Assembly (NCBI RefSeq): GCF_000315625.1
Contig: NW_005434549.1
Location: forward strand, 136,004-200,003
DNA length: 64,000 bases
DNA from: Guillardia theta CCMP2712
Taxonomy: Eukaryota; Protista; Cryptophyta
Direction: 5' to 3'
Below are positions 29,171-33,270 of this stretch, piece by piece (within the stretch, counting starts at the first letter, position 1; every line of letters begins with the position of its first letter). The notes beneath the pieces were generated by a model. That model was not told where the DNA came from, made no database searches, and saw only the letters and a program-made list of their open reading frames with translations. The position numbers were made by a program, and so were the translations under genes.

Positions 29171-29720
29171 CGCAAGGAGGGACTGGGCCCGGGGGGGGGG
29201 GTAGGGTAGTCAGAAGGCATTTTCTGGTACTGTAGAAGCAGTTTGTCAACTTCTTTTCAGTCAGGGGGTGGGTGGATGCGAGTCGGTTGCTGAGAGGCTC
29301 GGCGATCATCTGTAAAGTGGAGAAGGGGGGTGGTTTGAAGGGTGATTGGAGGGGTGGTGAGGGTTGTTAATTCTGACAGCAGGTCAGTAGCGCGATCAAC
29401 TTTACAATGTTCAATGCGGAGCATGGTTGACTGAGGACTCGAGGGCTGTAGAGTAGAAGGCGATGGCTGGGAGAAGAGGAGGAGGAAAGGTAGAGAGCTG
29501 TCAAGTTCAAGATGTTACACTTCGAGGCTCAGGCTGGTAGTTTCCGCCGCAAAACGTACTCGAGGCGCACATAGCAAGAGTGTCGAACGGTCATTGCATA
29601 TGTTAGCGGGTATGGCTTCAAAACAAGGAACGAGAGATGAGTGAGTGAGAGTAGATGTAACTTGATGCTCATCAACACTGCTCAGTGTGTTTGTCTCAAT
29701 GATGTGCTGCAGGACTTGCG

Positions 29721-32673
29721 ATGGCTTCCGCTTTCATCGTTCACAACCTTCAGAAGAAGATCCAGGCGGACAAGAGCAAGAAGACAGATCTCTCTTCTCC
29801 ATTGCAAGAGTCCAGCCGTCTTGAGCTCCCTGTGGATGGTTTTTTACGATCCGGGTTTCTCGAGAGGAAGCGTGTCACGGCGACCATAACGTGGCACAAG
29901 GTGAAGGCCGTGCTGACAGCAGAGGCGCTCCTGTTTGCAAGGCCGGACTCAAAGCTCGTCTCCGATGAGATTCCTCTGCATGAGATTACAGACATTCTCA
30001 CTGAAGCCTCGCTCGACAAGGGCCAAGACACCGCAAGCAAAGCCATCATCATCCAAACCACCAAGGATGGTCACAACAGCGGGAGAACCTACGTGTGCCG
30101 TCCGGACCCTGCGGAGTTTGACATGTGGTTCAACGATCTTCAACAGCAGTGTCAAGCTGCGAAGATTGCAAAAGAGCAAGCGAGAAGAGACGCTGAGAAT
30201 GCTGGTAGCCAACTTTCTCGGCTGAGAGCTAAGGTCTTGCGCGTGTATGAGTCGATATACAGCGAAGGCTTCTTCGCAACCATCCTCATGCTCTGCTTTT
30301 CTGTGGACGTGTGGGAAGCACAAGTTCTACCTGCTGATGGCTCAAGTGCGGCTGCGATGTTTGACACGTTCGATGTTGTCTTCACCAGCATCTTCACAGT
30401 TGAGCTGGCAGTGAACTTGTTTTCGCGCTCATCCCACTATTTCAAGCCCTTCTACTCCAACGGATGGAACATTCTGGACCTTGTGATAGTGATGATCTCT
30501 CTGATTGTCTTGTTCGCTCCCGGACTTCCTTCTCTTCAACCCCTCAGGCTTGTTCGCGTCTTCCGTGTCGCTCGCTTGTTTCGCAAGTTTCGCTCCTTGA
30601 ACCGCATCATCACGGCCCTGATCTCCGCTCTTGTCCCTGTGGCGAACAGCATGATCATCCTGCTTCTTGTCACTGCAATCTGGTCTGCCCTTGGCACTCA
30701 TCTCTTTCACGAGCAGAGCCCTGAGTTCTTCGGCAACTTTGCGTCCTCCCTTTTCACGGTAAAGCTCTCCCCAAGTACTAAGGGTCAAAGTGTTTGACTC
30801 GTTTGCTCATGCCTAGATGATTCAAGTCATGACAGGAGACGGGTAGTATTCTGCTTTCCTTGTCTTCTTCCCTTCTGTCCCCTCTTTTCTATATTCTCTC
30901 TGCCTCTGCCTCTGCCTCTGCCTCTGCCTCTTTCGTCTTGCTCTGACTAGTGTTGCAGCTGGGCTTCAGACGTTTCTCGTTCATTGTTCGACGATGGTAC
31001 AGTGAAGACAAGTCGAGACGTGTGGGTGGCGATGTTCTTTGTCTCCTACGCTCTGGTGGCCGGTGTCTTCCTGATCAACGTGGTGGTGGCGGTTCTCTTG
31101 GACGAGTTCATCTCTTCCATTCAGGCAGGAAAAGAAGCTCTCGAAGTGGCTAAGGCGGAGGAGGAGGACAGGAGGAAGAAGGCGAGGAGGTCCAACGGGG
31201 TGCTGGACCCGCTCACAGCTCACTTGTCACACTTCGTCTCGGAGAAGGACCTCAGGTCGAGGATCCACGAGACGTACGAGCGACTTGACTCGGACGGTTC
31301 GGGAGGTCTCAACTTCGAGGAGTTTCAGAAGGGTCTCAAGAAACTGCCGACGTCCTCGCCGATTCACATCCTCGAGGACGACTTCGAGGTGCTGACAGAG
31401 AACGGCAGGTTCTGCAACATCAGGAGAGAGTTCGGTAGCGATCAGTTCCAAGAGATTATGCGAGAGGAGCTGAAGCGATACTCCCAGCGAGTGCTGGCAA
31501 ACGCGATGCAAGAGACCCAGAGCTACGAGACGCTGGCGATGATGCTGACGCTGAAGCGGCTGGAGCTCATTGCTGAGAGCAATTCAAGGATCATCAAGTC
31601 CTGGGGCTTCTCCTCCAAGGGGGCCGGCATGCTGTCCGAGGTGTTTGCAACTCACGACCTCAACCAGGATGGTGTGCTGGACCTCAACGAGGCGAGAGAG
31701 GCGCTTCTGACCCTGGGAGTCCCCGACTTTAAGATAGATCACGTCCTAAGGGCCATGGACCTCGACGGAGACGAGAAGATCTCCAGAGAAGAGTTCCTCA
31801 GAGTCGGAGAGCACATGGAGAACACTGACGCTCGACTGGACCGTCTTGAGCACTCGGTCAATGACATCAAGACCATGATTCGTCTCCTCCTCTCCGCACC
31901 TGGCAAACCCGCTGAAGCTTCAGGTGACGCAAGGGTGTTAGCAGGTGGGAACGAGCATGTTGGAACGAGCATGAACTTCACTCTGCAGGCGATGGTGCAG
32001 GTGAAGGGAAGAAGCAGGAGAGCAACGGCAAGGACCAACGATTGCGACGAGCCTCATCGATGAAGTTGCTCAAAGTGAGCTGTGTCCTGCGCTCCTCTTC
32101 TTCTTTCCTCATCGTCTTCACCCCTCCTTCGCTCCTCTCCTTCTCCTCACCCCTCGGCTGCTTCGACCTTGTCATTATCCTGCAGGGTGCGTCCCCATCC
32201 CAGGTGCTGGACGAGCTGCTCGATGGCAGGAACACCCCTAAGTCGGACAAGAAACCCACCCGTTCTCAAGACAAGAAGCGACAACCAGCTGGCCATGGGG
32301 GGGAAGCAAAAGATCGAGCGCTCGTGCGAGATTGGTGGAGCAGGTATCAGGAAGATGACGACAAGTACGGCTCTGCTGCTCGACAGACCCGAGCTGCCAT
32401 GCCAGGTGACATGAAAAGATTGCTGATTGCGTGAGTGAAACATGCTGAGCAGAGTTGGTGCTTGTTGATGCTTTGAAGCAAGGGAACGGCTTCGACGAGC
32501 AGAACAGCCGGGAAAGGTCGATCAAGGGAAAGGAGAACAGCAGGAGAGAGGCAGTCAAGGCTCTGAGCAACAGAATTCTGTCGCAATCAAGACGGCACTC
32601 GGCCTCTGCGGTAGACCTTCGACAGCAAGAGAGCGAGGGCTTGGATAGATCTTTCCACGGAGCTCATGTATAA
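29721..32673 (+). CDS. PH domain + single-domain (1x6TM) voltage-gated cation channel (EukCat/BacNav-like) + EF-hands
   Basis: PH: LRSGFLERK..WHKVKAVLT..DEIPLHEI..GRTYVCR..FDMWFNDL. S4: LRLVRVFRVARLFRKFRSL. Pore FGNFASSLFT|MIQVMTGDG|WAS uses micro-exon 30817-30842. S6: FFVSYALVAGVFLINVVVAVLLDEF. EF loops DSDGSGGLNFEE, DLNQDGVLDLNE, DLDGDEKISREE. Further exons run to stop 32673. An upstream 5' exon is possible. Confidence 0.88.
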
Positions 32674-33038
32674 TTTATTTCTCAGCATCCAAACAATCTT
32701 GGCTCTGGTCAAGTGTTTTGCCTCAAAGATGGTTCGTTCTGATGTGATATTGCAAATAGAGAGTGCTTACAAGTCTAGTCATCCCCAGAAACAGTTGCTT
32801 GAATGTTTATCATACTAACTATGACGAACTTGATTTCATTATCCCACTAGCGGCCTTACCATTGTCTGGCCACATCTCAGGCTGCTCAACAGTGGCTGCA
32901 CAAGGCTAACTATTACGAATTAGGGGGAAGAGAGATGGCGCACACAACCATTGACAAGGTACAAGGAGAGAGTTTTATTCGTTTTCTCTAGAACGAAGAA
33001 TTCTTCAAAAATCGCGAGCATCCGTTGGATAAAATTCG

Positions 33039-33270
33039 CAGCTGACATTACAACCAGATGAATATCAGGAAGTATTCAGCTGACATCACAACCAGATGAA
33101 TATCAGGAAGTATTCAGCTGACATCACAACGAGATGAATATCAGGAAGTATTCAGCTGACATCACAACGAGATGAATATCAGGAAGTATTCAGCTGACAT
33201 CACAACGAGATGAATATCAGGAAGTATTCAGCTGACATCACAACGAGATGAATATCAGGAAGTATTCAGC
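33039..33270 (+). repeat. 38-bp minisatellite, 6 copies
   Basis: cagctgacat(c/t)acaac(g/c)agatgaatatcaggaagtatt at 33039, 33077, 33115, 33153, 33191 and 33229. No spacers. Confidence 0.95.

What the first reader, a model, noticed from the sequence alone, without database searches (positions are those of the whole stretch)
29721..32673. PH-domain + single-repeat voltage-gated channel + EF-hands with TGDGW filter on a micro-exon
Seen: only one S1-S6 unit, with a strongly charged S4, filter T-G-D-G-W assembled from a 26-nt micro-exon (30817-30842), an N-terminal PH domain and three EF-hand loops. Established: single-domain EukCat/BacNav-like channels drive action potentials in some phytoplankton; PH domains often bind phosphoinositides. 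Inference: a homotetrameric cation (possibly Ca2+) channel integrating voltage, lipid and Ca2+ feedback. The PH fusion is unusual to my knowledge. The micro-exon could allow swapping or skipping of the filter.
Basis: partly seen in the sequence, partly recalled or inferred. Interest (0 to 1): 0.72.

Follow-up and report, generated by a model that had tools for sequence, protein, structure and literature searches.

The report
PH-domain single-repeat voltage-gated channel gene
This is a real gene of the cryptophyte alga Guillardia theta for a one-repeat voltage-gated cation channel with a PH domain in front and a calmodulin-like calcium sensor behind; it is one of about 45 such genes in this genome, a design I found in no paper.

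Summary
The gene (+ strand, 29721-32673) has six GT-AG exons and encodes about 851 aa. Exon 1 is one open frame holding a PH domain and S1-S5, with six Arg in S4. A 26-nt micro-exon (30817-30842) encodes MIQVMTGD plus two bases of the Gly codon, giving the filter TGDGW. Exon 3 holds S6 and three canonical EF loops in a calmodulin-like module.

RNA for this gene is nearly absent, so the splice model rests on relatives. A G. theta transcript matches paralog C133 exactly across its own 26-nt micro-exon. A Hanusia phi transcript reads the pore without a break. dN/dS against the C19 paralog is about 0.12.

It is an EukCatB-like channel: NavEh is the best solved single-repeat match. It is probably Ca2+-permeable, because every family filter carries Asp.

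The PH fusion is not rare here. About 45 of 53 single-repeat loci have it, as do Hanusia and Rhodomonas, but no paper searched describes it. Filter swapping is not supported. Skipping the micro-exon shifts the frame, and no spare copy exists. This protein's PH lacks the canonical lipid-binding Arg (Val61).

The scan has already noted paralogs of this family elsewhere in this genome.

The parts
29721..30758 (+). Exon 1: one 346-codon open frame holding the N-terminal peptide, the PH domain, a linker and S1-S5
   Evidence: Translation. Pfam PH and Ion_trans. An in-frame TGA lies at 29700-29702. dN/dS against the C19 paralog is 0.12.
29721..29828 (+). N-terminal peptide (aa 1-36): MASAFIVHNL followed by a Lys-rich stretch. 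It is a candidate inactivation ball (inferred).
   Evidence: A hydrophobic MA(A/S)(A/V) start followed by basic residues is shared by 13 of 15 relatives. AF2 models a helix at aa 2-18 with low confidence. It resembles the NavEh N-helix as described in PMC9114117.
29829..30197 (+). PH domain (aa 37-159): seven strands and a long C-terminal helix with the hallmark Trp136
   Evidence: Pfam 28.1 bits. AF2 pLDDT is about 90. Foldseek matches the PH domains of GRK2, Slm1, TAPP1 and ARAP3. The family profile hits the PLEKHA7, PLEKHA6 and TAPP1 PH domains. dN/dS is 0.09.
30255..30758 (+). S1-S5 of the single repeat (aa 179-346)
   Evidence: Pfam Ion_trans. Helices in the AF2 model. Foldseek matches NavEh 8j7m and NavAb.
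30528..30605 (+). S4 voltage sensor (aa 270-295): Arg at 276, 279, 282, 285, 288 and 291, plus K289
   Evidence: Printed sequence. R276 is invariant, and R279 and R282 are nearly invariant.
30759..30816 (+). Intron 1 (58 nt, GT..AG, phase 0)
   Evidence: It has diverged from the paralog while the splice sites are kept. An intron at this position is shared by at least 13 paralogs.
30817..30842 (+). 26-nt micro-exon: the end of the pore helix and filter residues T352, G353 and D354, plus the first two bases of the G355 codon
   Evidence: It differs from the C19 paralog at 3 of 26 bases, two of them synonymous and one changing Gly to Ser. The same 26-nt exon is present in 6 paralogs. Its inclusion is shown by transcript P0047 for paralog C133.
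30843..30958 (+). Intron 2 (116 nt, phase 2), containing a (CTCTGC)x5.7 microsatellite
   Evidence: It has a large indel relative to the paralog. This intron is present only in the L003-L008 clade.
30959..31923 (+). Exon 3: W356, the rest of the pore loop, S6, a helical linker and the calmodulin-like EF-hand module
   Evidence: Translation. Pfam. AF2. Foldseek matches troponin C and calmodulin. dN/dS is 0.13.
31287..31322 (+). EF-hand loop 1, DSDGSGGLNFEE; the family-wide signature is DGSGGL
   Evidence: D112, S114, G116, L117 and E121 of exon 3 are invariant.
31656..31691 (+). EF-hand loop 3, DLNQDGVLDLNE
   Evidence: EF-hand_7, aa 226-281 of exon 3.
31758..31793 (+). EF-hand loop 4, DLDGDEKISREE
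31989..32074 (+). Exon 4 (86 nt), part of the low-complexity tail
   Evidence: The splice sites are conserved in the paralog and there is a 3-nt indel. Translation.
32186..32405 (+). Exon 5 (220 nt). The preceding 111-nt intron 4 (32075-32185) is in frame and free of stops, so it could be retained.
32453..32673 (+). Exon 6, ending at TAA 32671-32673. It follows a 47-nt intron (32406-32452).
   Evidence: LVLVDALK differs from the paralog by four synonymous changes. The frame is conserved at protein level (E 1e-13). Translation.

Best explanation
This is an intact, selectively constrained gene of Guillardia theta. It encodes one subunit (about 851 aa) of a single-repeat voltage-gated cation channel in the cryptophyte branch of the EukCatB-like channels. 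The domain order is shown by the sequence: a short hydrophobic-then-basic N-terminal peptide, a PH domain, a helical linker, S1-S4 with six Arg in S4, S5, a pore helix with filter TGDGW, S6, and a calmodulin-like module with three canonical Ca2+ loops. The rest is inferred. Four subunits probably form the pore, as in NavEh and BacNav. Depolarisation opens it. The ring of four Asp with Gly at filter position 4 probably makes it permeable to Ca2+, alone or together with Na+. Entering Ca2+ probably feeds back through the tethered EF-hand module. The PH domain sits directly under the voltage sensor as a cytosolic regulatory module. It may associate with the membrane or bind a partner, and it may control availability of the N-terminal peptide as an inactivation ball. 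The 26-nt micro-exon is a constitutive exon. It exists because two introns bracket the filter in a six-gene subclade. It is not a cassette for exchanging filters.
For: Domains are supported by Pfam and by AF2 with Foldseek for the PH plus voltage sensor and for the EF module. The gene model is supported by conserved splice sites with diverged introns and synonymous changes against the C19 paralog. It is also supported by the unbroken pore in the intronless relative L002/P0003 and in Hanusia transcript P0012. MMETSP transcript P0047 matches paralog L008 exactly across exon 1, its 26-nt micro-exon and exon 3. Constraint is shown by dN/dS of 0.12 for exon 1, 0.09 for the PH and 0.13 for exon 3. 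For family placement, NavEh (E. huxleyi EukCatB1) is the best solved single-repeat match to P0012, at 111 bits against 93 for NaChBac. The tree puts the gene in a starred cryptophyte clade next to a PH-less clade containing the haptophyte Haptolina. The literature assigns cryptophyte single-domain channels to EukCatB. For selectivity, the EhEUKCATB1 mutation E305D (TGESW to TGDSW) makes that channel permeable to Ca2+ and Ba2+. Gly at position 4 is a determinant of Ca2+ selectivity in CavMr, and CatSper3 and CatSper4 carry DGW. Every G. theta family filter I read has Asp. EhEUKCATB1 also has a C-terminal EF pair, and its currents are absent in Ca2+-free medium.
Against: No current has been measured for any cryptophyte member. 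RNA support for this particular gene is thin: two reads in a 6% sample of one RNA run and one 154-nt contig, with no junction reads. Placement in EukCatB was not tested against EukCatA, EukCatC, BacNav or CatSper reference sequences. The PH of this protein has Val61 where 11 of 15 relatives, and PLEKHA7 as aligned, have the canonical beta2 Arg, so specific phosphoinositide binding is doubtful. The N-terminal helix is modelled with low confidence. Tetramer formation is assumed from the family and was not tested.
Confidence: 0.75

Rival explanations
1. The PH domain is a true phosphoinositide sensor, so channel gating or inactivation depends on PIP2 or PIP3.
For: The PH fold is genuine and under strong constraint. 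The family profile's best solved matches are lipid-binding PH domains: PLEKHA7, TAPP1 and Akt1. The beta1 Lys/Arg cluster (R49, K50, R51) is conserved, and K60 and K62 flank beta2. The domain sits directly before S1 and so lies at the inner leaflet.
Against: The canonical beta2 Arg is Val61 in this gene, its C19 paralog and Hanusia P0012. From general knowledge, most PH domains bind phosphoinositides weakly or not at all. The top structural matches are GRK2 PH domains solved in complexes with G-beta-gamma.
Confidence: 0.3
2. The micro-exon is a regulatory switch. Regulated skipping or intron retention turns the gene off, or yields a pore-less PH plus voltage-sensor protein.
For: Skipping shifts the frame and gives a stop after 64 codons. 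Retaining intron 1 gives a stop after 12 codons. Hanusia transcripts P0013 and P0014 retain the introns around the micro-exon.
Against: There are no junction reads for this gene. The only exact G. theta transcript of a micro-exon paralog includes the exon. Intron retention is common in assembled transcriptomes. There is no alternative exon copy in either intron. Eleven paralogs encode the pore with no intron at all.
Confidence: 0.12
3. The channel is Na+-selective, like the characterised coccolithophore EukCatB channels.
For: Its closest characterised relatives, EhEUKCATB1 (NavEh) and SaEUKCATB1, are fast Na+ channels. The filter shares T, G and W with TGESW.
Against: The Glu that determines Na+ selectivity is Asp here, and the E305D mutant of EhEUKCATB1 loses Na+ selectivity. 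The Ser after it is Gly here, as in CavMr and CatSper3/4.
Confidence: 0.12
4. This copy is a silent or decaying duplicate in a large family that includes pseudogenes.
For: Almost no RNA reads map here. Several paralogs carry stops (C53, C5, C56, C30 and C17:79903).
Against: All six exons are open and all splice sites are GT-AG. dN/dS is 0.09-0.13 at dS of about 1 against the nearest paralog.
Confidence: 0.08

Closest known systems
EhEUKCATB1 / NavEh (Emiliania huxleyi EukCatB; PDB 7X5V, 8J7M)
   Same: Both are eukaryotic single-repeat 6TM voltage-gated channels expected to form homotetramers. Both have a TG[E/D][S/G]W filter and an EF-hand-type domain after S6. Both have an N-terminus with hydrophobic then basic residues. 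NavEh is the best solved single-repeat match by sequence and also appears among the fold matches.
   Different: NavEh has no PH domain. It is 542 aa against about 851 aa. Its filter has Glu and is Na+-selective, while this one has Asp. NavEh has a tall S5-P1 extracellular loop, and here that loop is only about ten residues. The EF module here is a full two-lobed calmodulin-like unit with three canonical loops.
Diatom EukCatA channels
   Same: They are single-repeat channels of red-plastid algae. Some carry Asp at the key filter position and conduct both Na+ and Ca2+.
   Different: The literature places them in a different clade. No PH domain is reported for them. I did not compare sequences directly.
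CavMr and CatSper3/4 (filters TLEGWVD, TVDGWTD, TQDGWVD)
   Same: They have Gly at filter position 4 and, in CatSper, the same D-G-W core linked to Ca2+ selectivity.
   Different: CavMr is bacterial with Glu at that position. CatSper is a heterotetramer of four different subunits. Neither has a PH domain or a fused EF module. This is a resemblance in the filter only, not shared family membership.
Animal channels that use calmodulin as a separate subunit (Cav, Nav, SK)
   Same: A four-EF, two-lobed Ca2+ sensor sits at the cytosolic end of the pore. The Foldseek matches include calmodulin bound to the Cav1.2 IQ domain, to Nav1.5 and to SK channels.
   Different: Here the sensor is part of the channel polypeptide, and one of its four EF loops is degenerate.
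Voltage-gated channels with N-terminal cytosolic sensor domains (KCNH PAS domain, Kv T1 domain), cited from general knowledge
   Same: A folded cytosolic domain sits directly before S1.
   Different: The fold is different. I found no described PH domain in that position in any voltage-gated channel.

Membership tests
Voltage-gated ion channel superfamily (Pfam Ion_trans PF00520) | A 6TM S1-S6 unit that matches the family profile above its curated cut-off | tested here: met
   Exon 1 scores 85.3 bits against a cut-off of 25 (profile positions 6-179). Exon 3 continues the profile at positions 203-233. The unspliced relative P0012 scores 126 bits over positions 7-233.
Voltage-gated ion channel superfamily (Pfam Ion_trans PF00520) | S4 with basic residues at every third position | tested here: met
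   R276, R279, R282, R285, R288 and R291. R276 is invariant in the family.
Voltage-gated ion channel superfamily (Pfam Ion_trans PF00520) | A pore loop with a T-x-[D/E]-x-W selectivity filter between S5 and S6 | tested here: met
   T352-G353-D354-G355-W356 across the micro-exon and exon 3. The same motif is unbroken in P0003, P0012, P0025 and P0047.
EukCat single-domain channels, clade B | One repeat per polypeptide in a eukaryote | tested here: met
   There is only one match on contig C125. Transcripts of relatives hold a single Ion_trans domain. The gene has spliceosomal introns.
EukCat single-domain channels, clade B | Host is a haptophyte, cryptophyte or pelagophyte | tested here: met
   G000 encodes GUITHDRAFT_100126 exactly. 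Guillardia theta belongs to the Cryptophyceae. PMC6509283 assigns cryptophyte channels to clade B.
EukCat single-domain channels, clade B | Phylogenetic placement with clade B, separate from BacNav, CatSper, EukCatA and EukCatC | tested here: inconclusive
   In the tree the cryptophyte clade lies next to a clade containing Haptolina, inside a 98* clade rooted on 4-domain repeats. No BacNav, CatSper, EukCatA or EukCatC reference was available to include. NavEh is the best single-repeat match in the PDB.
EukCat single-domain channels, clade B | The conserved TGESW filter with Glu that marks the Na+-selective coccolithophore members | tested here: not met
   This gene has Asp354, and so does every G. 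theta paralog filter I read. This is a trait of the coccolithophore subgroup, not of the clade as defined by phylogeny.
PH domain (PF00169) | Profile match above the gathering score | tested here: met
   28.1 bits against 25.1, over aa 43-144. The family profile hits the PLEKHA7 PH domain at E 2e-4.
PH domain (PF00169) | A seven-stranded beta sandwich capped by a C-terminal helix carrying the conserved Trp | tested here: met
   AF2 gives seven strands between aa 41 and 128 and a helix at aa 130-159, with pLDDT about 90. W136 is invariant. Foldseek target-normalised TM-scores to the Slm1, TAPP1 and ARAP3 PH domains are 0.72-0.77.
Phosphoinositide-binding subclass of PH domains | Basic signature K-Xn-(K/R)-X-R in the beta1-beta2 region | tested here: not met
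   The beta1 residues R49, K50 and R51 are present, but the beta2 position aligned to the Arg of PLEKHA7 and of 11 of 15 relatives is Val61, flanked by K60 and K62.
EF-hand / calmodulin-like module | Canonical 12-residue Ca2+ loops arranged in paired EF hands | tested here: met
   There are three EF-hand_1 matches and EF-hand_7 pairs. The loops begin at exon-3 aa 110, 233 and 267. A fourth loop is degenerate. Foldseek aligns about 200 columns to whole troponin C and calmodulin at E 3e-5, although the TM-scores are low.
BacNav | A prokaryotic channel of about 270 aa, with no added domains beyond a C-terminal coiled coil | tested here: not met
   This is a eukaryotic gene with introns, a PH domain and an EF module. 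NaChBac and NavMs score lower than NavEh.

The most novel reading that the evidence does not exclude
The PH domain, together with the conserved hydrophobic-then-basic N-terminal peptide, forms a built-in controller of N-type inactivation or gating that depends on lipid or on a partner protein, in a homotetrameric Cav-like channel. On this reading cryptophytes expanded the design to about 45 genes to build a diversified excitability toolkit, possibly acting downstream of their many channelrhodopsins. It would be the first voltage-gated channel family with a covalently attached PH module acting on the gate.
Probability: 0.25. Interest if true: 0.8.

Novelty: new variant of a known kind. Interest (0 to 1): 0.58.

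Why it matters
Single-repeat eukaryotic voltage-gated channels (EukCats) were described only in 2019. Only diatom and coccolithophore members have been characterised. This gene shows that the cryptophyte branch has a different design: a PH domain before the voltage sensor, an all-Asp Cav-like filter, and a tethered calmodulin-like sensor.

Guillardia theta, the source of the GtACR optogenetic tools, has about 45 copies of this design. A homotetrameric, probably Ca2+-permeable channel of modest size with two built-in regulatory modules is directly testable. The HEK-cell methods used for EukCatA and EukCatB would apply.

Such tests could show how a PH domain couples to a voltage sensor. They could also identify the depolarisation-activated Ca2+ entry pathway of cryptophytes.

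There is also a practical point. The public JGI models of two paralogs that I checked drop or garble the pore helix and filter. Surveys that rely on those models would therefore misjudge this family.

Tried and rejected
- RNA evidence for this gene: read laying on 29200-33000 gave two reads from a 6% sample of one RNA run and one 154-nt contig. It gave no junction reads. The two runs that hold the locus carry the introns, so they are DNA. The splice model therefore could not be confirmed directly.
- L001 as an orthologue: I first took metagenome contig L001 for an orthologue from another species. It is essentially the G. theta C19 paralog, so alignment A1 compares two paralogs.
- Last intron: my first choice of acceptor for the last exon (exon starting at 32479) broke the frame. 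The conserved frame requires the exon to start at 32453.
- PH domain against solved structures: the single sequence found nothing. Only the family profile did.
- Atlas searches: these returned only the family's own clusters and generic PH proteins.
- Neighbouring ORFs: none has a Pfam match.
- Searches not run: I did not run the large representative-protein search, because the family was already identified and that search returns no taxonomy.
- All searches used single exons by reference or natural unbroken relatives. Full-length residue numbers are arithmetic.
- Rejected readings: a separate PH gene (it shares an exon with S1-S5), additional channel repeats (only one match on the contig), and mutually exclusive filter exons (the 58-nt and 116-nt introns hold no second copy).
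Full report
**What is in the sequence**

The gene lies on the + strand. An ATG at 29721, preceded by an in-frame TGA 21 nt upstream, opens a 346-codon exon ending at 30758 before a GT. Pfam places a PH domain at aa 43-144 (28.1 bits, cut-off 25.1) and Ion_trans at aa 187-345 (85.3 bits) in this one exon. The PH and the channel therefore cannot be separate genes.

A 58-nt intron follows. Then comes a 26-nt exon (30817-30842), flanked by AG and GT, which encodes MIQVMTGD plus GG. After a 116-nt intron, exon 3 starts at 30959 with C TGG GCT. This completes Gly and continues WASDVS. The filter is T352-G353-D354-G355-W356, and the Gly codon is split across the splice junction.

S4 has Arg at 276, 279, 282, 285, 288 and 291. 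Exon 3 carries the end of Ion_trans (S6) and three EF-hand matches. Their canonical loops are DSDGSGGLNFEE, DLNQDGVLDLNE and DLDGDEKISREE.

Comparison with a paralog and frame checks give my model of six exons:
- 29721-30758
- 30817-30842
- 30959-31923
- 31989-32074
- 32186-32405
- 32453-32673

This totals 2556 nt, or 851 aa. The last intron is only 47 nt. It is required by a frame that is conserved at protein level and by four synonymous differences in LVLVDALK. Intron 4 (111 nt) is in frame and free of stops, so it could be retained.

Every search used a single exon by reference or a natural unbroken relative.

**Is the micro-exon real?**

Direct RNA evidence for this gene is almost nil. There were two reads in a 6% sample of one RNA run, one 154-nt contig and no junction reads. 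The runs that hold the locus carry the introns, so they are DNA.

The support is comparative, and it is strong:
- Against the closest paralog (G000 C19, which is L004 and essentially also metagenome contig L001), the 26 nt differ at three bases. Two changes are synonymous and one changes Gly to Ser. Both introns have diverged and carry indels, while the AG and GT sites are kept.
- The intronless relative L002/P0003 and the Hanusia phi transcript P0012 read the pore without a break, as ...FFTMIQVVSGDSWAS... and ...LFTMIQVMTGDSWAS....
- The MMETSP transcript P0047 matches paralog L008 (C133) residue for residue: aa 1-338 from exon 1, aa 339-347 from its own 26-nt micro-exon and aa 348-676 from exon 3. 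The homologous micro-exon is thus spliced in G. theta mRNA.

Skipping the 26 nt shifts the frame and gives a stop after 64 codons. Retaining intron 1 gives a stop after 12 codons. Neither intron holds a second copy of the exon. Skipping could only switch the gene off.

**Organism and family**

G000 has 87.1 Mb in 669 contigs and encodes GUITHDRAFT_100126 exactly. It is therefore Guillardia theta CCMP2712, a cryptophyte.

A six-frame search of the genome with exon 1 gave 122 matches. I fetched 52 loci and scanned them with family-specific profiles.
- Of 53 single-repeat genes, 45 have the PH-like module directly upstream of the voltage sensor, and 8 show none in the stretch I fetched.
- The exact 26-nt micro-exon occurs only in six genes, L003-L008.
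- Seven more genes share the intron before the Met but lack the second intron.
- Eleven genes encode the pore with no intron there.
- The filters I read are TGDGW, TGDSW, TGDAW, TGDNW, TFDGW and TLDNW. Asp is present in all of them.

The gene is under purifying selection. dN/dS against the C19 paralog is 0.12 for exon 1, 0.09 for the PH alone, 0.11 for S1-S5 and 0.13 for exon 3, at dS of about 1.

**Relatives elsewhere**

Named relatives with the same PH-channel-EF layout occur in Hanusia phi (P0012-14, P0045-46) and in G. theta itself. Databases label these only as 'PH domain-containing' or 'EF-hand domain-containing' protein. The family PH profile also hits Rhodomonas salina (P0060, P0117) and many environmental proteins.

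The haptophyte Haptolina (P0069) and the green alga Cymbomonas (P0030) have the channel without a PH.

I built a quick maximum-likelihood tree of S1-S5, rooted on repeats of 4-domain channels.
- A starred clade (95*) of 43 rows holds 35 of the 36 PH-bearing sequences in the tree. The 36th is G. theta locus L023, which falls outside it.
- Next to this clade lies a PH-less clade containing Haptolina and Cymbomonas.
- The window gene pairs with the C19 paralog, and Hanusia P0012 is sister to both.
- The eleven-row micro-exon subclade had already diversified before Guillardia and Hanusia split.

A single origin of the fusion is compatible with the tree but is not proven.

**Structure**

AF2 on exon 1, with 15 aligned relatives, gave a mean pLDDT of 77.6. 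It shows seven strands between aa 41 and 128 and a long helix at aa 130-159, with pLDDT about 90, followed by the transmembrane helices. A low-confidence helix covers aa 2-18.

Foldseek matches the PH domains of GRK2, Slm1, TAPP1 and ARAP3, with target-normalised TM-scores of 0.72-0.77 for the latter three. For the membrane part it matches NavEh and NavAb.

The family PH profile finds the PLEKHA7, PLEKHA6, TAPP1 and Akt1 PH domains by sequence. In that alignment the canonical beta2 Arg is present in 11 of 15 relatives. In this gene, its C19 paralog and Hanusia P0012 it is Val61, flanked by Lys60 and Lys62. The basic beta1 cluster (R49, K50, R51) is kept.

The region after S6 folds as two EF pairs (mean pLDDT 72.7) and aligns over about 200 columns to whole troponin C and calmodulin.

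**Comparison with known channels**

The literature defines EukCatA (diatoms), EukCatB (haptophytes, cryptophytes and pelagophytes) and EukCatC (dinoflagellates).

EhEUKCATB1, also called NavEh, has the filter TGESWSE and a C-terminal EF pair, and it needs external Ca2+. Its E305D mutant (TGDSW) becomes permeable to Ca2+ and Ba2+. Its structure is a homotetramer in which an N-terminal helix, two hydrophobic turns followed by five Arg, plugs the open gate. NavEh is the best solved single-repeat match to the unbroken relative P0012, at 111 bits against 93 for NaChBac and 90 for NavMs.

Gly at filter position 4 is a determinant of Ca2+ selectivity in CavMr, and CatSper3 and CatSper4 carry DGW. From this I infer that TGDGW makes the channel permeable to Ca2+.

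The window gene has Gly at position 4 where its closest paralog and the Hanusia relative P0012 have Ser. The codon for that residue straddles the 3' edge of the micro-exon.

The N-terminus, MASAFIVHNL followed by QKKIQADKSKK, is conserved in type in 13 of 15 relatives. It fits the description of the NavEh ball peptide. This is a lead and has not been tested.

**Novelty**

No paper in the searched library combines EukCat with pleckstrin. None combines cryptophyte, voltage-gated, PH domain and EF-hand. None relevant combines pleckstrin homology, voltage-gated and Guillardia. The two EukCat papers I read do not mention a PH domain.

The architecture exists in public databases only under automatic names. 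Two JGI models of paralogs mis-model the pore: GUITHDRAFT_100126 skips it and GUITHDRAFT_145749 reads through it.

This scan has already noted paralogs of this family on other DNA of the same genome, and one follow-up counted 45-50 genes. My independent count agrees.

I class the finding as a new variant of a known kind. It is an EukCatB-like channel with an undescribed N-terminal PH module and a tethered calmodulin-like sensor. This gene is one ordinary, intact member of that family.

Noticed in passing
window 33039-33270: A tandem array of a 38-nt unit, 6.1 copies at 98% identity, lies about 370 nt downstream of the gene's stop.
   Followed up: no
window 30898-30931: A (CTCTGC)x5.7 microsatellite lies inside intron 2, directly after the micro-exon. 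The read tool skipped it as a repeat.
   Followed up: no
L005 (G000 C3) = P0048 GUITHDRAFT_100126; P0029 GUITHDRAFT_145749: The public JGI gene models of two paralogs mis-model the pore. One jumps from aa 322 to the WAS exon, dropping the pore helix and filter. The other reads through the introns.
   Followed up: partly
P0017, P0057, P0055, P0056, P0021 (environmental relatives): In these proteins the PH profile match is split (positions 1-40 and about 44-109). In P0017 an EF-hand pair (Pfam, aa 133-194) lies in the gap, so an EF pair appears to be inserted into a PH loop.
   Followed up: partly
P0049 cluster (57 members, 900 aa): This environmental family has an N-terminal EF pair, then the PH, then the channel. 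One member is filed as a 'Promethearchaeia archaeon' MAG protein (MGB1597082.1). It is probably a eukaryotic contig binned into an archaeal MAG.
   Followed up: no
G000 C53:209015-217799, C5:381093, C56:400727, C30:59389, C17:79903: Several family copies carry one to five in-match stops, so they may be pseudogenes or may hold unrecognised introns. Some copies sit in pairs: C292 has two in tandem, C166 and C53 each have an opposite-strand pair, and C265 has two on the same strand.
   Followed up: no
P0013, P0014 (Hanusia phi transcripts): Both transcripts retain the introns around the micro-exon. In P0014 the micro-exon can be read out of frame inside the retained stretch.
   Followed up: partly
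window 32075-32185: Intron 4 is 111 nt, in frame and free of stops. Retaining it would add 37 residues. Hanusia P0012 seems to retain the homologous segment, which starts VS and ends LQ.
   Followed up: partly
G000 C42:207241-208629, C55:32318-33826, C4:139371, C8:605646, C25:325805 and others: The genome also holds long open frames (1200-1960 aa) with several matches to the S4-S5 region. These are multi-repeat, 4-domain-type channels alongside the single-repeat family.
   Followed up: no
L001 (ENA metagenome contig ERZ930064 k127_170670): This 'metagenome' contig is essentially the G. theta C19 paralog, with the same intron sequence and one residue different in the intron read-through. G. theta or a very close strain is therefore present in that sample.
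   Followed up: partly
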